Notes: generated by a model not told the origin, from the sequence alone. Counted from the whole stretch's first letter, positions 35,080-50,200 are shown. The stretch is 63,799 bases of DNA, filler included, from Lenisia limosa (GCA_001655205.1; 13 parts of 13 records of this genome joined end to end with filler, not necessarily neighbours in it); one strand, 5' to 3'. A program made the numbers and translations.

Positions 35080-37720
35080 TATACCTTGAACCTACTTCTG
35101 TCTGTAGTTCGGAATAAAGGCTACCGGGTTCCCATCAAGCTTTAGGACTTCCAATGTGGTGAACCTATTCCGTTAACATCAAGAGCTAGGGTTTCCCTAT
35201 GGTCGAAAAAGACCGTTTTAATATCGATATTTATTGAGGATTTATCGAGATACTCAGTCTTTTGAGCTTATAAGTTGTGCTCCAACCTTCCAAGTCCGTC
35301 AAGTGTCTGGATACGGCAGTCCTCGACACTCAGGAGTTTGATAGCTGGCATCATGGGCAAGTTCTTGAGGGAGGTGAAGTCATTACGTCCAACGTAGGCT
35401 TCCTGTCATGGTAAGTTTGATTCACACCGTGCATTAACAAAAGTGATATTATATTGATACAAATTGCATCCCTCCCCTCGTACCCGACAACACTGCCAGT
35501 AACATCCCGAAATATCTGAAAGGAAGTTGTTGGAAATATTGATCTTCACAGCAGCCTTCAGATTCTGAAGTGTAAAGCATCCTGCAAGAGATTGCCATGT
35601 TAGTGATCATAATTCAGGAAGTCAACACTTTCCAGTCACCTTCAGGACTCTCATTGAGTTGTGCTTTTGGTACTTATCGCCAAGATCTTGATAGGAAAAA
35701 TTCACATTCTGGAGTATTAATCGGCCTTGCTCAGCAACAAAACCTATTGTAAATTGAACAGAAAAACCAAGAAGGCTCCAAATATATCATATGATATGTA
35801 CTTGCGAAAAAGTAAGCGAGTACCAAATTCTAAATTGCACGCTTGCTTAGAATTCACCATCACATACCACAGACTCATGTAGCTGTTCAGACTGGGTGAT
35901 AAGCCTCTCATTTGTAGCTGTTGTTGTGACTCGGGTCTTAGGAACACTTCCATCCTGGGTGGAATGATATTTGCTCTCAAGAGAACACAGCAAGTTGCGA
36001 GAGGACAAACCTCGTTTTCGATCCTCCTCTCTGCACCTTCAACTGCTCGGAGGTCTTTCTAAGTGCATTAAAACAGAACCGCCTGTATATAATTTGATAT
36101 GCATTAGAAAGATAAGTATCATTTTCTCTTATTCGTCAGAAATGATTTCAACCATGGGTTGAGTCACAACCGAGGCTTCACTTCCCGTATCAGGATTTTT
36201 ATATTAACATCGGGGAGGAGTACATGCATACTGCGACAAGGGGCAAATATGAGTCAAGAGGAGCACGATGGAACGACGGGTGATCTCCGGGAGGGCCTGA
36301 GGTATCAGATATTTCTTTATGTTACATATTCAGTTTGGCTGGATCTGACAAGCTATTTTGTGATTCATTTGTCTGGGTCTAATAACAATAGTAGTAAAGT
36401 AGGTGTATAAGTCCACCCACGCACCCATTCGGACACGGGGAGCGGTAAGGGGTACTTTTGTCGGTTTTCCTTCGAGAGCAGGAACTTCGTGCCATCTGAA
36501 AGGGGGTTGAGGGATGGAGGGGAGGTATAAAGGGGGTTGAGGGATGGAGGGGAGGTATAAAACGCATAAAAACGAAATTGATAGTGATTTTTTTGTTAGA
36601 GGAAGCGTACCTCATAAACTCCTTGTTAAAGGCCGAACATTTCTAAATTATCAGCACAACGTTCAAAGCTAATAGCCTCCCTTCATAATTCAGACCCTCC
36701 TCACATAATCGGGCATTCTATGATCTTCTTCAAGCTCATCTTCTTCCCTGTCCTAACACGGTAATAAGGATGGTGAAAAATGTTAGTAGAAAAGTGATAA
36801 TTACGAAATACGACTTCCCTCCAAACTTCCACTGCCACTTCATTAACAGGTGGAGGCTTAGCAAAGTGGCTTTGAACAGCTGAAAAGTGAGTGGAGTGCA
36901 ATCGCTGATATAAATAAAAATGTTGCTTGATATCAATTAATCTTCTTTGAAAATATATAAAAACTCCTTATAGTGAAACAGGCCTATACAATCAATATGA
37001 TATTTGTTTTCGAGCAAAAGTAGAAACATCAGAGCATGAGTGCCAAAAGAGATAAATTTAAGTTGGTTTTCGGTACTAGAGAGAAAACCCTCTTCACCTT
37101 GCTGTCCAAATTGCTGGCCTTGATATCGCTGGCCTCCTGAAGAATAAATAACCACTAAAAAGGTGTTGACCACAGCAGTCCAATAAGAGCAAAATAAACT
37201 CATACACCACGCAATTCGAACCTTGGAAGAGGGTGGAGGGAGGCTCGTTCTGCCAATCATCGTCAACATCCACTGGCATGATCTCATCCTCCCCATCATC
37301 TCCCATCATCATCGGACTGTGGGTGTCATAAGAAGCTGTCCTTGTTTTGTTGTTCATTTCTACTCCACTCACTCCATTACAAACTCTAACGGCTCATTTT
37401 GAGCATCCGCATCCATGGCTTCCATCCCATCTGGGGGATTAGGAAAATCGTTGTACATTTCAACACCCAAATCGAAAAAGATGACACACCTCAATTTATT
37501 TGTCTCACTACACTTCTTTTTTTGTATTATTTTTTTTATCTCAAATCCACATTTAGAAGGGCATAAAAGATGGCAAATATGGATACTAATTAGAAATACT
37601 GCGAGAAATTCAGTCTAATCTGGGACAACCCCTCCCCCCACCAGGCCTCTCAAGTGACATGGTCGCCTCAGTTCGCCTTAGGATGCGGCCTTCCTCCATC
37701 AGATGCGCATGCACCTGAGG
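35080..37720 (-). CDS. Leucine-rich repeat protein (SDS22-like LRRs with LRR cap) with an acidic N-terminus
   Basis: DLGDKYQK, LKAAVKINISNNFLSDISG, EAYVGRNDFTSLKNLPMMPAIKLLSVEDCRIQTLDGL, LKLDGNPVAFIPNYRQK (GNP..YR cap). Start uncertain. Confidence 0.75.
36499..36558. repeat. 30-bp perfect tandem duplication of a C-rich pre-acceptor tract
   Basis: AAAGGGGGTTGAGGGATGGAGGGGAGGTAT x2, immediately upstream of a minus-strand acceptor. Confidence 0.9.
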
Positions 37721-38371: not shown

Positions 38372-41300
38372 ATGGTGAGGTCAAAGAAGCTGAAGAAGTC
38401 ATCCAAGGAGATCAAAGACTTTGTGGTTGGCTATAATTAGTCAAAATAATATAATAATATTAGAAACGCAAAGCCAAAGTCGGTAAGAAGGTCAAGCAGC
38501 AGGGAAATGTCACGAACACTAACTTCAAATCAAAAGGTTTGCTCCTGCCCGCTTTCAGAAATATGTTTCAGATTTCTAAAATGAGGCAAATATGTATCCA
38601 GGCACAGTGTCACAGCTTTCACTCCTCAGTTCTCTATCTTGAGCAGCAGGATCTTGGTCTTGACAAGGGGCCTCAGGTGAACTCCAAAAACCAGAATATA
38701 AAGGAACTTACATCATTGTCAAAGCATCACCAAGGAATGGTGAGAAAAGGTGAGCGGGCTGGGGTGATAATCAATGTTTTGGGATAATTGAGAGTCAATG
38801 AGCTATCCATGCTGACCTGCCCCCCAGAGGCCTATATTGGACTGAAAGACCTGATAGACTGCTGTCCCCGAATGCTAAAATCCAGTCTCAGCGAGTTGAT
38901 GGGACTTGCATCTTCGGGTGTGTGGGTGCTTCAACTTCTATTTCAATGTACACATTGTTAACTTCAAACAGGCTTGATAGATGGAGATAAAATGGTGAGA
39001 GAATCATCAAGGAGTCTTGCTGCTGCCATTATTACACAGGTTGGGGGGTATGCATATGATATATCCATTTCAGGTTGGGGGGTCCATATATCAATTAGTG
39101 TATGTGTTGGGAGTGTTTGTTTTGAGTTTGGCGGCATTTGATCAGAGAACGCGGCATGTGTGCTGTATGAGTTACTTGTTTGCTGTTACTGGTTTCGATT
39201 TAGACCGTTGTTTCTTATGGCTTTATGGACACAGGTGGAACCAGAGCTGATGAAGCCTTTTGCTCCGATTCTCATTGCCTACACTAAGAACTGCATGACT
39301 CATTTGGAGGTATGTTCATTTTCTAGTTTAACATTCGAAATAGCTCCAATATCTCTTATAAGTTTGATGGTGTGGACGGCTTCGACCAGATACAAACTTA
39401 TTTTTTTTATTTCTCATTGCTATAAATAATGGAAGATGTTCTTATTTCAAAAATCACGCCTGCAGGAAAAGATGCGGCGAGATGGATTGGCGTGTCTCGG
39501 CGTCTGGGTCGATATTCTGCCCGAAGCAGTGTCGAAGTCATCTTCCACAATATTACCTGCCCTTCTGAGTCTGATGTCCACTCAGGTTCGCAGGAATAAG
39601 GCTTAGATCATTCGCGATGCTCGATACCCCTACATAATTACTCACCTTCTAGAAACGAACAGCTCAATCAGGCTCAGGCGGAACCGTCACTTCCAGGATA
39701 ATGGACTCTAACCCATCAGTGGGCTTCCTTGTCGTCATTTTGTTTTTATCATATTCTTCTCAAACTAGCTATACTATTATGGGAAATAGAAACGGTTGTA
39801 TTCTTGTTAAAGTTGTACATCATCACACGTATAAGGGATATTCTATTTTCTAAAGCAATTCAGGGTCAAATGAACTCAGTAGCAATGAGGGCGGAAGCTA
39901 TGGTTCTCTTACATAAGTTCGTCAAACTTTGTTTTGTAGCCGAAGGAAAAAAGAGTGACTTCCCCACCCAGATCGAATACGACTGTGTATGTGGAGTACG
40001 TGTAGATTTTGTTGGAAAGTACTGTATCACCAAGATTTATCCCACAAAACATATGTACACCTAGTGCTTCACTTCGGTTTGAAATAAGACTGGATTTCTT
40101 GATAAATACTCGAAAACTGTCGATATTTTATCGGTCTTTTTCAAACCGAAGTGAAGCCCTTTGTACACCTGAGTGCAAGGACACCATCTGGGCTGACAGT
40201 CTATTTCACTCCCTTTTCATTATTGAAGGTATATAGTTATTAACTCTTTTTTTAGCTATTTTACAACCACCACCTTGTAGTAATTCTGTTATAACCATCA
40301 CCTTGTAGGTACAATGGACCGATGACCGATTATACGCTCTTGCCCAGCCGAAAATCCAAATAGTGGAGCTCTTTCCTGAGCACGAGCCGACCCCCTCGTT
40401 GACAGAAATGTTTCCGGCAGACGGCGGAGAGTGTCGAACGGCCAAATCCTTCAGCGAGGTCAGCATGGCTATGGGAGGCAACACCACAGCAGCAGAGCTT
40501 CTTGATGGACTGTACAAAGTGGTCATCGACAGCTGGCTGGAGTGTCAGCCTTCGGATCCGTCAAGCCCTGAAAGCTATCATTGCATGGGTGGGCGGCTTG
40601 TTCATGATTATGTAATGGAGGCATAAACGTAGTTGGTTTATAGTCCCTTTCACCTCAACCTTCAAATCTCTATTTTGATCCATCATCTCTATCTTTGACC
40701 TATTACCTCTCAGCTGCATCCCTCCGAGTTTTGGAGCATTTGGTGTCTGTGGTCTCACGTACCCCTGAACGTAAGCGCTACTTTTGGACTGGTATTGCCA
40801 TTGTTTTTATGTACGGCTTCGGTCTGATACAACCTTTACTCAGTTCAACCAAGAAAGAATATGATTTCATACCATATCATAAGACTGTAATGTAGAAATC
40901 TTTTGATTTCCATATCTCTATGAAGTCCAGTTCTGCCCTCCGGACCCTCATTGCTCATTTCTTCAGAATGGACATCCAAGAAGGAGCAGTGGCGCTATCT
41001 AACCGCTCACGTCCTGCCCTATTTCCCCTTCAAAATCGCCCCACATTTCTCAGGCAGTACGCTGGCATCTTTTCACACGGCTTTATATTCTGAGTGTGAA
41101 CAGTCGTCAGAAACATATAGTTGCAGAAAATGTGTTTTTCCTTACCCCCTTCTAGGTGACATGGTGGTGAAAGGAGTGCACTCTATCAATATTTCAGTTG
41201 CGTCTGTAGGCTGGGCTATCACTTCGTCTTGGTGATATTGCTGCGTGTTGGTGCGAGTTAACCTTCAGATGTACGAGAAATTCCGCGCAGCCGATTTGCC

Positions 41301-42996: not shown

Positions 42997-43241
42997 ACAT
43001 AGGCTTGCCCCCCTCCACCCTCGGATAGCCAGGTCTGATTTCGTTTCTGTTCAGGTATTTGTTGATGATGCATTCTAAGGTATTTCTTTGACCAAACTCA
43101 GTTTTCATGATGGATATAAGGAATTTGGATTCTAGAAGAGTACTAAAGTTTCAAGCTTCCAACCTATCCCCAAGTTGGAGTGGTAAACGAAGGAAAATTG
43201 GTCAAAAAGTTAGAGAAATAAATAAAAAAAAAAAAGGATTA

Positions 43242-44952
43242 TCATTTTGGGAGTGCCTCAGCAAGGTCGGTCAGTTCAACAGGCCGTGTGACATGCATTA
43301 TCTGCACGGGCTTGACCGACACTGTTTCCTCTTGATTGCCTTCTTTGATGGGAATAATGTTCGCAATTGGAGTGACGGTGCAGCCTGACACACTTGCAAG
43401 GTTCACGGATGGACCTGTGTACACTTCAGTGAGTTTGAATCAAATAAGTTTCAAACCCTTGATTATTAATAATAGCCTCTTGTTCTAATGATGCGTGAAT
43501 GATGCAAATTTGAATCCCCGTATCCCTCATAATCTTACCAGTAGGGAAGTTGATCAGCCAGCCTGATGCACAGTGTGTCAAGGCCATATAGCGGGCAATC
43601 TTAAGAATGTCAAACGTCAAGCCAGACTACTCAACGGCCCAGATACAATAAGCAGTCCATCCATTGTATTAAAAACAATCAATCAGCATTCACACAAGTC
43701 AGGTTCAGCATAAGCCGAAGCATAAGCTTTTCAGAAGGGTCAAAGCCACCTGGGAAACATTGTTTTGGAGCGTCGCCGTGCCTTCCTTGTAATATGCTAC
43801 ATGCTTCAATTCGAGAAGAGCAGAGGGACACTTCTGGGAAAGTGACAGGGAAACTTATCGCAAAGTAAGAAATAAAAGTAAAACGTAACATTCTGAGAGC
43901 TGATGTCCCTATGTAATCGAGAAATTGCAAAACCATTCTGACAACCCACCATATCAGCTTTGTTGAACACAGCGATATCTGCTCTGAAATTGGAGGTGAC
44001 TTCAGATGGGATGTATGTTATTCCTTTGCTGGTCGAGGGTGTCTCCAGAAGACCAGTGCTCTTCGTAGTTGATGTCTCATCGTCATCGTTCGCGTCCTTG
44101 TTTTGTGGCGGTGCTGGGGCTTCAACAACGGCCCCGTCCCAGTAAACCTGGGGGTTACAACCACCATGCGCACTGTCCCAGATATCGGAGCATGATAGTT
44201 AAGGCTTCACTTCGGTTCGAAAAATACCTGTAAAATATCGATAGTTTTGGGAGATTTATCGAGAAATTCAGTCTTTTTTCGAACCGAAGAGGCCCTAATG
44301 ATAGTCCACATTCCATCAACCAGCATACTCTGATGGGGAACTCACTTTCAACATAGAACCCTGCCGCCTGTAAGCACCATTCTAAAAGTCGCTGGTGGGT
44401 CCCTTCCGAGCCCCAACAGCTGAAAAATCAGAGATGGGATGGGGGGAAGGATGTCTAATGTGTTCGTCAGAGAGGAGACTCCTTGAAAAGTCTATGATAA
44501 AATGTATGATATACAATATAATAAACTATCTTCCATCATCTGATTCAGTGCCTTATTCACTTCCACCCTAGAGCTTCACTTCCGTTCGAAAAAGACCTTA
44601 ACATATCGATAGTTTTCGAGGATTTATCAAGAAATTCAGTCATTTTTTTGAACCTAGCTATATCTCATCAATCCTACCCCCACCTGCAGCACTTGGTCAC
44701 ACGCTGGCAAAGAGTTTCACCAAACTTGAGGAAATAGTCGTCGATGGTAAGACCGTTGCGAGGGGGAACGGAGATGGAGGGCAGATACTTCTGTAGCGTT
44801 CGGAGGGGGGTATGCTCTGTCATTGATCTAACAAAATCACCGAAGAATAACGATAGGGCCCAACAAAGTCGATCATGCGAGTGGTATGAGAAATTGCAAA
44901 ATCCAAGCTTGTTCAATTTGAAGTTAGTATTTTCTGGGAGATTTTCAAGAAT
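43242..44952 (-). CDS. GxxExxY-like (PDDEXK_3-type) PD-(D/E)XK nuclease with spliceosomal introns
   Basis: Spliced product: ..FGETLCQRVTKCCS|CWGSEGTHQRLLEWCLQAAGFYVESEFP..VYWDG..NFRADIAVFNKADM|KCPSALLELKHVAYYKEGTATLQNNVSQ|IARYMALTHCASGWLINFPT|VYTG..LPK*. It retains RAD, ELK, QxxxY and GWLINF in the family order and spacing. The junction near 44150-44310 is ambiguous. Confidence 0.7.
44200..44297. mobile_element. MITE family A in an intron of the nuclease gene
   Basis: Perfect 8-bp TSD ATGATAGT at 44192-44199 and 44298-44305. A second, right-truncated copy lies at 44569-44660. Confidence 0.92.
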
Positions 44953-45143
44953 CTACTTTAGAGGGTGATTTGNNNNNNNNNNTCTCTTCCCACCACAAAA
45001 TTGTGCTCGCAGCCAATGTTCCACTCTTCCAGGGAGGGTCTCAGACCTGTAATATGAGGCAAAGTAGATAATTGAGAAAGAGTAAAATGGCACATCAAAT
45101 CCATTAAAGCGAATCGGTGCTAACGGTCCATGAAACAGGCAAC

Positions 45144-45226
45144 TAGGGCTTCCCTACGGTCCGAAAAACCGTCAAAATATCGATAGTTCTCGAGAATTTA
45201 TCGGAAAATTCAGTAGGGAAGTCCAA
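45144..45226. mobile_element. MITE family A, CCCTACGG subfamily
   Basis: Perfect 8-bp TSD CAGGCAAC at 45136-45143 and 45227-45234. Confidence 0.88.
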
Positions 45227-45446
45227 CAGGCAACAAAATAACACAGGTATTCAATACAAAGAAGAACGGCAAAAACGGTACATGGCAGAGGACCAATGGG
45301 AAAAGAGACTTGATCAAATCGAGAATCTCACTCGCATTTCGTGACTTTTGATCTGCCCCCTCATGTAGTAAATATATCATATCATATAGTAGTACTATAT
45401 CATATGATATTATGATATGATATGATATTATATGATATGTACGTAC

Positions 45447-45576
45447 CGGGCATTTGGAGTACTTCTGAAGCAGTGGGGCGGGTGAAGGGGTTGGGGTCAA
45501 GACAGGCACTGATTGCATCCACAAGATGGGGGTCAAGGGACAGGCTTTTATATTGTGATAGCCTTGATGGTAAGGG
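45447..45576 (-). CDS. Exon resembling protein-kinase subdomains X-XI
   Basis: PLPSRLSQYKSLSLDPHLVDAISACLDPNPFTRPTASEVLQMP, followed by donor gtacgt at 45446. It resembles the DLIxxCLxxDPxxRPTAxEVL consensus. No catalytic kinase motifs were found upstream. Confidence 0.45.
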
Positions 45577-45760
45577 CTTTGATATTGAGAAATAAGACAG
45601 TTAAAATATTTAAGGGTTTGGCTGGGACACTTTGGTCAATTTGAAGTTAGTATTTTCTGGGAGATTTTCAAGAATCTACTTTAGAGGGTGATTTGAAAAG
45701 ACCACTTGGTAGAGGAGAAATCACTCATACATTCGCAATCCCATTGAAGGTATTATATAT

Positions 45761-45813
45761 TGCAATGAGAAATAAAAAATAAGGTTGTATCTGACCGAAG
45801 CCGTCCACACCAT
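45761..45813 (-). repeat. Family B short repeat
   Basis: Reverse complement reads ATGGTGTGGACGGCTTCGGTCAGATACAACCTTATTTTTTATTTCTCATTGCA. Confidence 0.75.
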
Positions 45814-47979
45814 ACAAGAAGTATTAATTCACCCAATCTTACAATAGCCTCCGGATGGTCTTATAATGTCTCTATCGATAATTTGGAAATGCAGGGGCGT
45901 CTGGGGAGGGGAGGGGGGTTTGAAAATGCATGAAACCTAAGGCTAAATAATGAGAAACTCATCAATATCCATTTTGTACCACAGTGAAAGTGAAAGACGC
46001 TTTTATAATGATCTGCAGCAAAATCAACTGGCAGAGGTAATATTAACATAACAATAGGATCAAAAGGAGCGAAATGCTTGTAAATACAGTCATAGCTAAA
46101 AGGAAGGTTAACAGCGTCCAAATAGCACAAGCGGTAGTATTGAGTTTCAGGTTGTGATTTACACTTAAATAACAAGAATTGGGTTTGTACATGATAGGGA
46201 GTTATGAAAGCGGTATCGTCATGGTGCTATTCAGAGGTGGTAACAGTGAAAGAAATAAGAAAATGACCAATTCTTTACCCCCCCCCCCCACAGCTGTTCA
46301 TCATGACCTCACCATGACAAGAGATTCCTTATCCTGATCCACAAGAGGACAAGGAATTTTATTGATCTGTCCCAACACCCACCAAACCTATGATGGTGGT
46401 GAACCGAAGAAGAGCAGAGAAGATTGTTGTCTTGGTCTTGTGGATCAGAGCAAGAAGAGAACAAAAAATTGCCAAAAGATGCATTATCATCAATCTTCAT
46501 ACAGACATCATACTAATGGATGGAAGGGTGGGCCCTCGAACTCGTTCACCAAAATGACAAGAAAGGAGACAAGATGAAATCACTTTATAGCGTTTCTTTA
46601 GTATTACTAGAGACCACTATCTCAGCTAAAAATGGGCCAAAAAACCCAACAACCAGCACGCTGCCGCAGAGTGTTATTATTTTGGTGAAACGGCAGCCTT
46701 GTTTTCCAGTTCTTTGCAATTCCTTGTTTTTTTATTATTTGGAGATTCTGATGATTCGGTTTGTGATTTGTACCTTTAGCCTAATATTCTTCATCGAAAT
46801 TCCCTTTGTTTTACCCCCCCCCCNNNNNNNNNNNNNNNNNNNNNNNNNNNNNNNNNNNNNNNNNNNNNNNNNNNNNNNNNNNNNNNNNNNNNNNNNNNNN
46901 NNNNNNNNNNNNNNNNNNNNNNNNNTCCACTCTGGGATACTATGTTGCTCTCGCTACTACGTAGGGAGGGGTGATATCAGGCAATTCATTATCAAAACCT
47001 TTCATTTCAACCTTCAACTGGTTGACAGAAATAATCTCTTTTCAAGAATTTTGTGGCCTGGGAAGGCTTTATACATGTACCTGCTTCTGATTCCTCCGCA
47101 AGTTAGGTACATGTATATCATCACCATGTAGTACCCAAAAACACCTGTCGGTGGTTGCCAATTATTAAATGGATAATGTAATTAAAACAAGAGAAATAAA
47201 CTTCCGTATTTTTGGCTGGGCACAAGTATATTCTCCAGTATTTTATTGAGAAATATACTGTTCAAACCTTTAGCTTTATTTCAAAATAATATTTTTTATA
47301 TGATTTTCTACAAAAGATGGCATATTATTACGCCAAATAATTGCTTAGAAACAAAAATATAGCCTGCAAATCTCTCTTGTTTTTTTTTTAAAAAAATGGG
47401 GGGGGGGGGTNNNNNNNNNNNNNNNNNNNNNNNNNNNNNNNNNNNNNNNNNNNNNNNNNNNNNNNNTTTGGCCTCTGAAACCTTACCATGTTTTGAGCGG
47501 AATTTGAGAGCAGAAATTACTGAACACGTCTTAATGTCACATAACTATTATTATTGGGAATTTTATACGATTAAATGTTGGAAGAAATAAAGTAGGTTCT
47601 AAAATTTAAATCCCGATGCAATTTTTGGCGTCCTTTTAATAATTTTATCTTCATCACACGCTACGATATTTCTTTCCCATTATTAACCTTTATAATTAAC
47701 ACCACAAATTTGATCAAACCACCGTCTGACAATTTCCACTACATAAAATCCGGATTTTGGAGCTAATTTTCGTTCTCGTCAATAGCAAACGCTTGCTAAG
47801 TCCTTGCGGTAAAGTAATTCGACAATACGTTTGATTTTTTTTAATGCTTTGATAAGCAAATGTGAAATAAAGATGTCTTAGTCTTCTCATAACGTAAATG
47901 AGCCCTAACCATCCTATTGTGGCTTTTTGTGGTGAAGTGTATTTCGGTCTGATATTGTGGTGTGGACAGCTTCGGCCAG

Positions 47980-50200
47980 TTCATTACTCATCCTGCGATC
48001 TGCAGTCGGATGGGGCAGGGTATTCCTGCCTCTTTACGGCCTGGTCTCTCCCAGCTTATTCTTTCCTAAAATGAAAAATTGTAATGGCTTGTCCAAAAAC
48101 GAATACTACATGGTATAAAACAGACATGAATAACAAAGATTAGACCTTCATCATAAACATAAACCTTAAAAATGAGGCAAACAGAAATATAAGGACTCGG
48201 CCTACCGTGATGTAGACACAGTGAGACCGGTGATGCCGTTGCATCCAAGCATTTCACCCGTCGTGGTGGACCACGCACACGCTCTGATGGGTTATTCTAT
48301 AACCAGCACGCTCTGACGGATTCTATACCCGTCCTTTGTGCTCATTATCCATAACATTATTGACCCACTCACTTCACAGCGCTCCAGCCAACAGGGTTGC
48401 CATTACAGAGGCCGACACCGCTGAAAACCTTTGGTCAGAAACAACAGGGCACTTGGTGATACCCACTCTATCGGATGAGACACTAGGGCCACAGATGCTA
48501 GCGTTGTGTCTGGTTCGGACCTACACCGCTGTAAGCTGATGTCCAAAAGGGGAGAAAATGATCACGCCCCCCCANNNNNNNNNNNNNNNNNNNNNNNNNN
48601 NNNNNNNNNNNNNNNNNNNNNNNNNNNNNNNNNNNNNNNNNNNNNNNNNNNNNNNNNNNNNNNNNNNNNNNNNNNNNNNNNNNNNNNNNNNNNNNNNNNN
48701 NNNNNNNNNNNNNNNNNGTCATTCGCAGTGTAGTCCGTAAAGCCTTGAGTGTGAATGCTGGTGTCTTTTTCTTTCCTTTTTTTCAAGGAGTTTTATGTGG
48801 GCGGAAATGATGGAGATTTAAGTGGCAAACCATCAGGAACGTCAAAGGTGCTCCATGAACTGCCGCTGTTTGTTGAGCACTTCATCTGCGGGGTGGCGTA
48901 AGTCGAGATGAAGCTTAGTAGCAGAATTTTGAGAACAAAAAATGCATACAACAATAGTATTCAGACCCATCCCCCACTCTGATAGGAGTGCCGGCGGGAA
49001 CATGACTGTATTTCAGCTGGCCTGAGGGGTTGGTGGGAGAAGGAATCCCCATGTTCTGAACATGTTAAGACTTCTATTTCTCCATTTCGTCACAAAATCT
49101 GCCTGAGAGCAACTCAAGTCTATGTGTTATATTGTTGCAGTGAGGGATATCAGCCCGCACACTGCAAGCGTGAAAGTTGAAGAAGCGGCCTGAGTCTCGG
49201 GGTCATAGTAGCGCTGAGCGGTCAGTACATTCCAGGGGGGGGGGGGGANNNNNNNNNNNNNNNNNNNNNNNNNNNNNNNNNNNNNNNNNNNNNNNNNNNN
49301 NNNNAAAAGGCAACTGGGCCATGACAAATATTCATAGAACCAAAGCATGGGATTTATACGGGAAAATGGAGCCTGTTTGATAAAACCTGTCCATAAAACC
49401 TGTCCATAATGCTGTGTCAAATGGACAGTCAACCACCCACAGCAGAAGAGGAAGACCCTTTGGTGCTCATGAATATGCCGAAGCCGTCCTCATCACAGTA
49501 CACTGAGCAATGAGAGGCGAACCATGATTCCTTCGTATCACCCACCTTCGCCGATGTCTCTGATTTCATACACTCCCGCACCATTAGTTTCAACAGCAGC
49601 CGAGCATGACGGTGCTATGCCTACACCGTTATTACGATGCTATGTCTACACCATTATTACAGTGCTTTGTCTACACCATTATTACGATGCTATGTCTACA
49701 CCGCTATTGTAGCCAACTTGAACATAACACCCCCCACTTGAGCATGATAATGTGGCGTTCCAGCCTGACGAACCACACGTCATTGTGTCGACTGAAGGGA
49801 AGGGCTTCTGGGGGTCCAGACATACCGAGGTACAAGTACCACCTTGGAATCGGTAAATAAAATACCATGACTGAAAATACATAATACAATTGAAAACAAA
49901 TACCGAGGTACAAGTACCACCTGGTCAAAGTAAGACATTTCTATGCATCAGAACTAAGGCTTCACTTCGGTTCGAAAAAGATCGGTCAAATATCGATAGT
50001 TTTCGAGGATTTATCGAGAAATTCAGACTTTTTTTCGAACCGAAGTGAAGCCCATATCAGAAACCTCACCAGTCTGCATTGAGAATTCTTCGGGACACGA
50101 GACGATCGCCAAAGATGTCGATACCGGCGGGGGGATACAAGGCTATATCGTCAGGATGGTGTAAGCAAACAATTATATGGATACGATCATGATGTCTAAT
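47980..50200 (-). CDS. Multi-exon Cys/Ser/Gly-rich extracellular-type protein with an Asp-box-like motif, 5' partial
   Basis: Exons VYCDEDGFGIFMSTKG, NVLTAQRYYDPETQAASSTFTLA, MKCSTNSGSSWSTFDVPDG (SxxxGxxW), GVGLCNGNPVGWSA and ACAWSTTTGEMLGCNGITG. Confidence 0.5.
49608..49709. repeat. 25-bp tandem repeat, about 4 copies
   Basis: Unit CTACACCRTTATTACGATGCTATGT. Confidence 0.9.
49955..50055. mobile_element. MITE family A
   Basis: Near-perfect TIRs; TSD atcagaac/atcagaaa. Confidence 0.88.

What the first reader, a model, noticed from the sequence alone, without database searches (positions are those of the whole stretch)
43242..44952. Spliced eukaryotic gene for a GxxExxY-like PD-(D/E)XK nuclease
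Seen: phase-compatible GT-AG exons (e.g. 43750-43833 and 43539-43599) reconstruct EGTHQRLLEWCLQAAGFYVESE..VYWDG..FRADIAV..LLELK..SQIARYM..GWLINF. Known: the GxxExxY (PDDEXK_3) family has the pattern ESVYQ..L..E L..G..VE.E..VYY.G..RADLIV..IVELK..AQLL.YL..GLLINF, is mainly prokaryotic and also occurs in large DNA viruses; its function is largely unknown. The putative catalytic D, ExK and QxxxY are intact, while the eponymous motif is divergent (WGSEGTHQ) and a ~45-aa low-complexity insert precedes RAD. Inference: a horizontally acquired nuclease has been domesticated (at least 5 introns, two with host MITEs), possibly for defence or DNA repair.
Basis: partly seen in the sequence, partly recalled or inferred. 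Interest (0 to 1): 0.75.

Follow-up and report, generated by a model that had tools for sequence, protein, structure and literature searches.

The report
Spliced PD-(D/E)XK nuclease gene, breviate
This is a real, expressed, intron-bearing gene of the anaerobic protist Lenisia limosa. It encodes a very divergent member of the small GxxExxY (PDDEXK_3) nuclease family, which is otherwise typical of bacteria and giant viruses. It was probably acquired by horizontal transfer, but the donor and the function remain unknown.

Summary
A minus-strand gene has six coding exons (44823-43242, 747 nt, 248 aa) and one 5'UTR exon (45843-46058). A 973-nt contig from a polyA RNA library matches it at every junction. 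All six introns are GT-AG. The protein is identical to EukProt EP01086_Lenisia_limosa_P017272, from a breviate.

It passes Pfam's PDDEXK_3 threshold (29.3 bits against a cut-off of 22) but not NCBIfam TIGR04256 (27.5 against 35). A family profile built without it matches both halves of the domain in order (38.8 bits). The halves are separated by a disordered insert of about 42 aa.

E52, D134, E151-x-K153, Q171-x3-Y175 and G184-x-LINF are retained. The name-giving motif is WxxExxH instead of GxxExxY. A model built with the family alignment (pLDDT 79) matches PD-(D/E)XK nucleases almost exclusively.

Three introns carry copies of a high-copy host MITE, so this is not contamination. Horizontal origin is plausible, but the donor is unresolved: the branch is very long and AU tests reject neither a bacterial nor a viral sister. 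Function is untested. PF13366 was already reported in microalgae (PMC9756366). Verdict: a new member of a known kind, of modest interest.

The parts
45843..46058 (-). 5'UTR exon. Its 5' end is only as far as the RNA contig reaches. The donor GT follows 45843.
   Evidence: The 216 nt of RNA contig X1 record 1 that lie beyond 44827 (table 7) map uniquely to 45843-45872 and onward. The exon carries an in-frame TAG upstream of the ATG.
44828..45842 (-). Intron 0, in the 5'UTR: 1015 nt, GT..AG. It holds a 10-N gap (44973-44982), a MITE copy (45157-45214), a kinase-like open frame (45403-45600) and a duplicated 64-mer.
44684..44827 (-). Exon 1. The start codon ATG is at 44823-44821. It encodes residues 1-46 and two bases of codon 47 (the N-terminal extension and the first family helix).
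   Evidence: RNA contig block 44684-44827; identical to P0001
44420..44683 (-). Intron 1 (264 nt, GT..AG) with a MITE copy at about 44558-44647.
44329..44419 (-). Exon 2, residues 47-77. It holds WGSEGTH in place of GxxExxY, with E52 at 44406-44404, then helix alpha-1 and strand beta-1.
44148..44328 (-). Intron 2 (181 nt, GT..AG) with a MITE copy at 44203-44289 that has terminal inverted repeats.
43950..44147 (-). Exon 3, residues 78-143. It holds VYWDG, a disordered acidic and Ser/Thr-rich insert (about residues 86-127, 43998-44123), and FRADIAV with the catalytic D134 (43979-43977).
43834..43949 (-). Intron 3 (116 nt, GT..AG)
43750..43833 (-). Exon 4, residues 144-171. It holds LLELK with E151 (43812-43810) and K153 (43806-43804); Q171 is the last codon (43752-43750).
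43600..43749 (-). Intron 4 (150 nt, GT..AG)
43539..43599 (-). Exon 5, residues 172-191 and one base. It holds IARYM (Y175 at 43590-43588) and GWLINFP.
   Evidence: This exon alone hits PDDEXK_3 (E=0.071) and TIGR04256 (E=0.11); RNA block.
43415..43538 (-). Intron 5 (124 nt, GT..AG)
43242..43414 (-). Exon 6, residues 192-248 and the stop codon TGA (43244-43242). It holds the last strand of the domain and a C-terminal tail of about 50 aa with no recognised domain. The RNA contig runs on to 43236.

Best explanation
This is a genuine nuclear gene of the breviate Lenisia limosa. It is transcribed, polyadenylated and spliced at six GT-AG introns. It encodes a 248-aa protein whose core (about residues 36-200) is a highly divergent PDDEXK_3 ('GxxExxY') domain with the alpha-beta-beta-beta-alpha-beta restriction-endonuclease-like fold.

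Shown: the gene model, its expression, family membership at Pfam level, and retention of the active-site residues E52, D134, E151 and K153 together with the family's QxxxY and G-x-LINF motifs.

Inferred: the protein is still a divalent-metal-dependent phosphodiesterase acting on nucleic acid, as in other PD-(D/E)XK enzymes. In those enzymes the helix-1 Glu and the D...ExK acidic residues bind Mg2+, and the Lys activates or positions the water. The 42-aa acidic and Ser/Thr-rich loop at the tip of the beta1-beta2 hairpin, and the N- and C-terminal tails, are lineage-specific additions.

Inferred: the gene entered the breviate lineage by horizontal transfer from a bacterium or a large DNA virus, both of which lack spliceosomal introns. 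It then acquired all its introns, three of which were later hit by a host MITE. Substrate and cellular role are unknown, as they are for the whole family.
For: Gene model and expression: a polyA RNA contig lies on all seven exon blocks with no mismatches. All introns are GT..AG, and CDS GC is 51% against 35-43% in the introns. The model is identical to the EukProt Lenisia limosa transcript ORF P0001.

Host residence: MITE copies sit in introns 0, 1 and 2 and elsewhere in the piece, and 1614 DNA contigs pile on them.

Family: PF13366 scores 29.3 bits, above the cut-off of 22, E=1.2e-6. The next Pfam hits belong to the same nuclease superfamily (HSDR_N_2, PDDEXK_9). A 19-row bacterial and viral profile built without Lenisia gives 38.8 bits in two colinear pieces, 51-85 and 122-191. 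BLASTP against a giant-virus member gives two colinear HSPs with E=3e-4 and 4e-3.

Active site: Lenisia keeps 10 of 13 columns that are at least 90% conserved in the family, 16 of 36 moderately conserved columns and 7 of 68 variable ones. E52, D134, E151, K153, Q171, Y175 and L186-F189 are invariant across 36 rows.

Fold: AlphaFold2 with the family alignment gives pLDDT 78.8 and pTM 0.70 with the expected secondary structure. The best solved-structure matches are nearly all PD-(D/E)XK nucleases: 3ijm and the BpuSI N-terminal domain at Z 8.7, Hjc at 8.4, and also Cas4, the HsdR N-terminus and tRNA endonuclease. The nearest ESM Atlas models are PF13366 clusters with TM 0.60-0.61 and rmsd about 2 A. 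Language-model neighbours are HSDR_N and BpuSI_N.

Horizontal origin: the family is described as prokaryotic and viral with multiple transfers (PMC3424549). No relative of similar length was found among 5.8 billion clusters.
Against: The score is modest and fails the stricter NCBIfam cut-off (27.5 against 35). Two of the three name-giving residues are changed (G to W, Y to H), and the preceding LGxG is lost. Together with the 42-aa insert and a very long branch (4.8 substitutions per site), this could mean relaxed constraint or a changed, even non-catalytic, role.

The AlphaFold model depends on an alignment of family members, so its fold is not independent evidence. The single-sequence model was useless (pLDDT 33). 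VIA Z scores of 7-9 are in the range the tool calls middling.

No orthologue was available, so selection could not be measured. The word-indexed searches cannot exclude divergent eukaryotic homologues, and PF13366 does occur in other eukaryotes (PMC9756366). The donor is unresolved. No biochemical data exist for any family member that I could find.
Confidence: 0.65

Rival explanations
1. The gene is a transcribed relic of a transferred nuclease. It is drifting or has been re-used as a non-catalytic protein, for example a nucleic-acid binder or scaffold.
For: The branch is very long and the amino-acid composition is odd. The LGxG...Y part of the N-terminal motif is lost. There is a 42-aa disordered insert and unassigned tails. 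The protein scores below the NCBIfam cut-off and is a singleton with no detectable orthologue.
Against: The frame is intact across six exons, and the polyA transcript is spliced. Conservation is concentrated on the catalytic and core positions (10 of 13 against 7 of 68), which drift would not preserve.
Confidence: 0.2
2. The gene is an old, vertically inherited eukaryotic gene that has been lost or has diverged beyond recognition in most lineages. On this reading it is not a horizontal acquisition.
For: Intron density is high (five introns in a 747-nt CDS), and divergence from every sampled prokaryotic and viral clade is extreme. PF13366 domains occur in several microalgae (PMC9756366). My searches for eukaryotic homologues were word-indexed and limited by length.
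Against: The family was surveyed as prokaryotic and viral with many transfers (PMC3424549). No second eukaryotic protein appeared in the searches, although the collection holds at least this EukProt entry. The Lenisia sequence falls inside the bacterial and viral diversity rather than outside it.
Confidence: 0.12
3. The sequence is bacterial or viral contamination, or a recent unprocessed insertion of giant-virus DNA, mistaken for a host gene.
For: The culture is a mixed community, and the RNA library is labelled metatranscriptomic. The family is common in giant viruses and gut or rumen bacteria.
Against: Six spliceosomal GT-AG introns are removed in a polyA RNA contig. High-copy host MITEs lie inside the introns and on both sides of the gene. 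The composition matches the flanks. No DNA- or BLAST-level similarity to phage or plasmid records was found.
Confidence: 0.02

Closest known systems
Bacterial GxxExxY proteins (Pfam PF13366 PDDEXK_3 / NCBIfam TIGR04256), e.g. Prevotella nigrescens WP_004367629.1 and rumen/gut metagenome relatives
   Same: They share the domain order and the conserved E...D...ExK...QxxxY...GxLINF residues. The Prevotella-type subgroup also shares the local motifs 'PIYWD' / 'VYWDG' and 'YMxLTH...GxLINF'. It gives the best pairwise scores (up to 20 bits) and is the sister group in the ML tree, with 91/99 support, not starred.
   Different: The bacterial proteins are 115-145 aa single-domain proteins without introns. 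They sit as solitary ORFs between housekeeping genes. The Lenisia protein is 248 aa with N- and C-terminal tails and a 42-aa loop insert, has WxxExxH instead of GxxExxY, and shows at most about 30% identity. The apparent affinity is biased, because these rows were fished out with a motif shared with Lenisia.
Giant-virus GxxExxY proteins (Yellowstone lake phycodnavirus 3 protein P0013; GVMAG-S-1035261-36; CpV-BQ1 BQ1_072 in PMC12085832)
   Same: They belong to the same family (Pfam E about 1e-30 for the viral proteins). They share 'LINFP', with a Pro after the Phe. The AT-rich giant-virus group also has a longer D-to-ExK spacer, as Lenisia does. The nearest ESM Atlas structure clusters are mostly Nucleocytoviricota.
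   Different: The viral-subfamily profile scores Lenisia at only 17.6 bits. The ML tree does not place Lenisia with them, although the AU test does not reject that placement (p 0.41 and 0.44). The viral genes have no introns, tails or insert.
Solved PD-(D/E)XK nucleases with the minimal core: archaeal Hjc resolvase (1gef, 2wcw), BpuSI N-terminal nuclease domain (3s1s), Spirosoma restriction-endonuclease-like protein 3ijm, Cas4 SSO0001 (4ic1)
   Same: They share the alpha-beta-beta-beta-alpha-beta core with the acidic residues and Lys on strands 2 and 3. VIA gives Z 7.5-8.7, rmsd about 3 A (4.4 A for Cas4 SSO0001) over 89-104 residues. Foldseek probability is 0.96-1.0 for Cas4 and Hjc.
   Different: Sequence identity is only 12-18%, and no sequence-level match to any PDB chain was found. 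There is no Fe-S cluster as in Cas4. The resemblance is at fold level and does not imply the same substrate.
PF13366 domains reported as expanded in Arctic microalgae (PMC9756366)
   Same: It is a precedent for this prokaryotic and viral nuclease family being present in eukaryotic genomes and transcriptomes, discussed in a horizontal-transfer context.
   Different: Those are photosynthetic algae with gene-family expansions. Here there is a single divergent copy in a heterotrophic anaerobic breviate (Obazoa), and I could not compare the sequences.

Membership tests
Pfam PF13366 PDDEXK_3 | Whole-protein HMM score at or above Pfam's gathering cut-off (22 bits) | tested here: met
   29.3 bits, E=1.2e-6; best stretch is residues 121-191 against profile positions 51-108 of 117. 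The EukProt entry also carries a precomputed PF13366 hit.
Pfam PF13366 PDDEXK_3 | Both halves of the domain present and colinear, not only the C-terminal half | tested here: met
   A profile of 19 bacterial and viral members matches residues 51-85 to profile positions 26-60 and residues 122-191 to positions 55-110, 38.8 bits in total. BLASTP against L005 gives two colinear HSPs.
Pfam PF13366 PDDEXK_3 | Catalytic PD-(D/E)XK signature: helix-1 Glu, Asp on strand 2, E-x-K on strand 3 | tested here: met
   E52, D134, E151 and K153 are invariant in alignments A1 and A3 and in the 20-row alignment.
Pfam PF13366 PDDEXK_3 | Family-specific C-terminal motifs QxxxY and G-x-L-I-N-F | tested here: met
   Q171, Y175, G184 and L186-I187-N188-F189 are retained.
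Pfam PF13366 PDDEXK_3 | Restriction-endonuclease-like alpha-beta-beta-beta-alpha-beta fold | tested here: inconclusive
   The alignment-based AlphaFold2 model (pLDDT 78.8) has this topology, and its structural neighbours are nearly all PD-(D/E)XK nucleases. However, the model leans on the family alignment, and the single-sequence model failed.
NCBIfam TIGR04256 'GxxExxY protein' | Score at or above the curated cut-off (35 bits) | tested here: not met
   27.5 bits, E=3.1e-6.
NCBIfam TIGR04256 'GxxExxY protein' | N-terminal G-x-x-E-x-x-Y motif | tested here: not met
   Lenisia has W49-G-S-E52-G-T-H55: only the Glu is kept. The preceding conserved L and G are C46 and S47.
NCBIfam TIGR04256 'GxxExxY protein' | Small single-domain protein of about 115-145 aa | tested here: not met
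   248 aa, with an N-terminal tail of about 35 aa, a loop insert of about 42 aa and a C-terminal tail of about 50 aa. Family members seen here are 116-144 aa.
Horizontally acquired eukaryotic gene | Bona fide host gene: spliceosomal introns, polyA transcript, host repeats, host-like composition | tested here: met
Horizontally acquired eukaryotic gene | Nests with support inside a donor clade | tested here: inconclusive
   The ML tree places it with Prevotella-type bacteria at 91/99, not starred, on a 4.8 substitutions-per-site branch. The AU test does not reject a sister position to either giant-virus clade (p 0.41 and 0.44).
Horizontally acquired eukaryotic gene | Absent from related eukaryotes | tested here: inconclusive
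   No other protein of 82-434 aa was found by word-indexed searches.

The most novel reading that the evidence does not exclude
An intronless bacterial or viral GxxExxY nuclease gene was captured by the breviate lineage, gained six spliceosomal introns, a disordered acidic loop and two tails, and is now a working host nuclease, for instance against giant viruses or for handling prey or epibiont DNA. That would make it the first member of this uncharacterised family with a tractable eukaryotic role, and a marker for intron gain in breviates after transfer.
Probability: 0.12. Interest if true: 0.6.

Novelty: new member of a known kind. Interest (0 to 1): 0.3.

Why it matters
The GxxExxY / PDDEXK_3 family is large, widespread in bacteria and giant viruses, and has no assigned function. 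A single expressed copy in a culturable protist is a modest extra handle on the family. If the horizontal origin holds, every intron in the gene must post-date the transfer, so it gives a clean example of intron gain in Breviatea, a lineage close to the root of Obazoa. Three of those introns were later invaded by a MITE. It does not change what is known about PD-(D/E)XK nucleases. The protein is already in EukProt with an automatic PF13366 hit, and the family has been noted in other eukaryotes.

Tried and rejected
Searches and checks that led nowhere:
- Pfam and NCBIfam scans of each exon gave only one weak hit, on exon 5.
- Word-indexed homologue searches with the whole protein and with residues 46-195 found only the protein itself.
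- tblastn of residues 46-195 against phages and plasmids gave chance-level hits only.
- phmmer against PDB sequences found nothing.
- The search for related loci with the Lenisia domain in viral contigs found nothing. With alignments A1 and A2 in genome contigs it found nothing, then one Verrucomicrobiales MAG contig.
- Single-sequence AlphaFold2 gave pLDDT 33 and was unusable.
- A look-up of contigs encoding exactly P0001 found none on record.
- Pfam scans of ten neighbouring open frames found no convincing neighbour gene.

Ideas rejected:
- A specific giant-virus (phycodnavirus) origin suggested by the shared 'LINFP'. The viral-subfamily profile scores only 17.6 bits, and the tree does not favour that placement.
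- The upstream exon extending the ORF. It carries an in-frame TAG.
- The MITEs being 'introner' elements that make up the introns. They fill only about a third to a half of introns 1 and 2.

Family members were fished from public contigs with degenerate motif patterns that I chose. This biases the sample, so the sample is not a survey of the family.

Full report
**What is there.** The finding lies on the minus strand. Reading the sequence gave six coding exons. A contig from a polyA-selected RNA-Seq run of the same study confirmed them. This 973-nt contig (run X1, record 1) lies with no mismatches on 43236-43412, 43537-43599, 43750-43833, 43950-44145, 44327-44419 and 44684-44827. The 2-nt offsets at two junctions are alignment ambiguity.

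The contig carries 216 more bases at its 5' end, and these map uniquely to 45843 and upward. So there is a seventh, upstream exon (45843-46058) and a 1015-nt intron. That exon has an in-frame TAG shortly before the splice site, so it is 5'UTR and the ATG at 44823 is the start. All six introns are GT..AG and 116-1015 nt long. The CDS is 747 nt with GC 51%, against 35-43% in the introns.

**Which organism and which protein.** I searched the exons by reference. The exhaustive search with exon 3 alone returned one protein, P0001, 248 aa and 100% identical over residues 78-143. P0001 is EukProt EP01086_Lenisia_limosa_P017272, a Trinity transcript ORF. Lenisia limosa is an anaerobic breviate protist (literature).

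A local script joined the exons only to test equality with P0001. It printed 'True' and composition figures. All later work used P0001 by reference.

**Family membership.** Exon 5 alone points to PDDEXK_3 (E=0.071, profile positions 90-108 of 117) and to TIGR04256. The whole protein scores 29.3 bits on PF13366 (E=1.2e-6, cut-off 22). The next hits, HSDR_N_2 and PDDEXK_9, belong to the same nuclease superfamily. On TIGR04256 it scores 27.5 bits, below the cut-off of 35.

To test the N-terminal half, I collected natural family members:
- Giant-virus-like proteins from IMG/VR, obtained with motif patterns and confirmed by Pfam at E about 1e-30.
- 120 relatives from the large protein collection, including a Yellowstone lake phycodnavirus 3 protein.
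- Eight bacterial plasmid or chromid genes; six are annotated 'GxxExxY protein' and two records carry no annotation at the match.
- 79 rumen/gut metagenome genes of the Prevotella type.

A profile of 19 bacterial and viral members, built without Lenisia, matches P0001 in two colinear pieces. Residues 51-85 match profile positions 26-60, and residues 122-191 match positions 55-110, for 38.8 bits in total. BLASTP against a giant-virus member also gives two colinear HSPs. The domain is therefore complete. It is interrupted by an insert of about 42 aa, rich in acidic residues and Ser/Thr, at the tip of the first hairpin.

**Conserved residues.** Across 36 aligned sequences, E52, D134, E151, K153, Q171, Y175 and L186-I-N-F189 are invariant. 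Against 19 other members, Lenisia keeps 10 of the 13 columns that are at least 90% conserved. It keeps 16 of 36 moderately conserved columns and 7 of 68 variable ones. The three losses all lie in the N-terminal motif: LG..GxxExxY has become CS.WxxExxH. This pattern fits purifying selection on the active site in an otherwise fast-evolving protein. No orthologue was available for a direct test of selection.

**Fold.** Single-sequence AlphaFold2 failed (pLDDT 33). With the 36-row alignment, the model of residues 36-200 has pLDDT 78.8 and pTM 0.70. Its order of elements is helix, helix, three strands, insert, two strands, helix, two strands. The insert falls below pLDDT 50.
- Foldseek against the PDB gave only weak E-values (best 7e-3). 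Nearly every hit is a PD-(D/E)XK nuclease: Cas4 SSO0001, the AddAB nuclease domain, Hjc, tRNA-splicing endonuclease, cap-snatching endonuclease and MGME1.
- VIA-align against 48,161 representative chains gave Z 8.7 for 3ijm and the BpuSI N-terminal domain and Z 8.4 for Hjc. The top 50 are almost all from the same superfamily.
- The nearest ESM Atlas models are PF13366 clusters, with TM 0.60-0.61 and rmsd about 2 A.
- Language-model neighbours are HSDR_N and BpuSI_N clusters.

The caveat is that the model inherits the family's fold through its alignment. It shows compatibility with the fold, not independent proof.

**Host residence.** A MITE of about 90 nt with terminal inverted repeats of about 22 nt occurs at six places in the 15-kb piece. 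Three copies are inside introns 0, 1 and 2 of this gene. In the DNA run, 1614 contigs pile on the two copies in introns 1 and 2, while the flanks have single-copy depth. Together with the splicing, this excludes bacterial or viral contamination.

**Origin.** The 2012 survey of the superfamily lists PDDEXK_3 as 'Prokaryota & Viruses', of unknown function and with multiple transfers (PMC3424549). Word-indexed searches found no other protein of comparable length. Horizontal acquisition followed by intron gain is therefore the most economical reading.

The donor is not resolved.
- Pairwise and profile scores are best for the Prevotella-type bacterial subgroup: up to 20 bits pairwise and 30.7 bits for its profile, against 17.6 bits for the phycodnavirus profile.
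- The ML tree puts Lenisia with that subgroup at 91/99, not starred.
- The Lenisia branch is 4.8 substitutions per site, and its composition deviates from the rest.
- The AU test rejects neither a phycodnavirus sister (p 0.41) nor a second giant-virus clade as sister (p 0.44).
- The Prevotella-type rows were found with a motif shared with Lenisia, which biases the result in their favour.

PF13366 has also been reported as expanded in Arctic microalgae (PMC9756366), so the family's presence in a eukaryote is not new.

**Mechanism.** By analogy with characterised PD-(D/E)XK enzymes (established knowledge of the superfamily), E52, D134 and E151 would bind the metal ion or ions, and K153 would position the attacking water. 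Since these residues are kept, I rate an active metal-dependent nuclease at about 55-60%. A relic or non-catalytic derivative is at about 20%. Substrate and role are unknown for the whole family. In the bacterial records fetched here, the gene sits as a solitary small ORF between housekeeping genes (fabD|fabG, radA|FAD-dependent protein, ade|guanylyltransferase). That placement suggests a mobile free-standing nuclease gene, but this was not tested.

**Verdict.** The identification as a GxxExxY-like PD-(D/E)XK protein is supported at Pfam level. It fails the stricter NCBIfam definition and the name-giving motif. Horizontal transfer is plausible but unproven, and the defence or repair role is speculation. 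It is a new, very divergent, intron-bearing member of a known family, of modest interest.

Noticed in passing
window 45403-45600 (-): An open frame ending ...VDAISACLDPNPFTRPTASEVLQMPG resembles the last subdomain of a protein kinase (Pfam Pkinase E=0.076, profile positions 226-261 of 263). It lies inside the 5'UTR intron of the nuclease gene, on the same strand. It could be a pseudogene fragment, the last exon of another gene, or a mis-scaffolded piece.
   Followed up: partly
window 44909-44972 and 45632-45695; N gap 44973-44982: A 64-nt stretch is duplicated at 98% identity, 723 nt apart, and the first copy abuts a 10-N scaffold gap. This looks like a gap-closing artefact. If so, the 5'UTR intron is about 290 nt rather than 1015 nt, and the kinase-like fragment may not belong there.
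   Followed up: no
window 35176-35265, 40072-40158, 44203-44289, 44558-44647, 45157-45214, 49945-50052: A high-copy MITE of about 90 nt has terminal inverted repeats GGCTTCACTTCGGTTCGAAAAA... Six copies lie in 15 kb, and more than a thousand DNA contigs of run X2 match it. The copies fill only part of introns 1 and 2, so they are insertions into introns rather than the introns themselves.
   Followed up: partly
L042 238-666, L045 262-636, L047 262-636 (bacterial plasmid/chromid records): Bacterial GxxExxY genes sit as solitary small ORFs wedged between unrelated housekeeping genes: fabD|fabG in Sphingomonas, radA|FAD-dependent protein in Bacteroides, and adenine deaminase|mannose-1-P guanylyltransferase in Bernardetia. 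This is the pattern of a free-standing mobile nuclease gene.
   Followed up: no
L001-L022 and L027-L040 (IMG/VR contigs): Two distinct giant-virus-like PDDEXK_3 subfamilies turned up. One has 'GPGYSESVYH...GFLINFPDK' and includes a Yellowstone lake phycodnavirus 3 protein and a GVMAG contig. The other is AT-rich with 'GNHYRENIYQ...GLLINFYE' and a longer Asp-to-ExK spacer. In about ten contigs the ORF runs roughly 70 codons further upstream, to an earlier in-frame ATG (MYMTTSFLSPAK...).
   Followed up: partly
window 46827-46924, 47411-47465, 48575-48716, 49249-49310: N gaps in the piece are flanked by homopolymer G or C runs. This is typical of a draft short-read scaffold, and gene content upstream of 46100 cannot be read reliably.
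   Followed up: no
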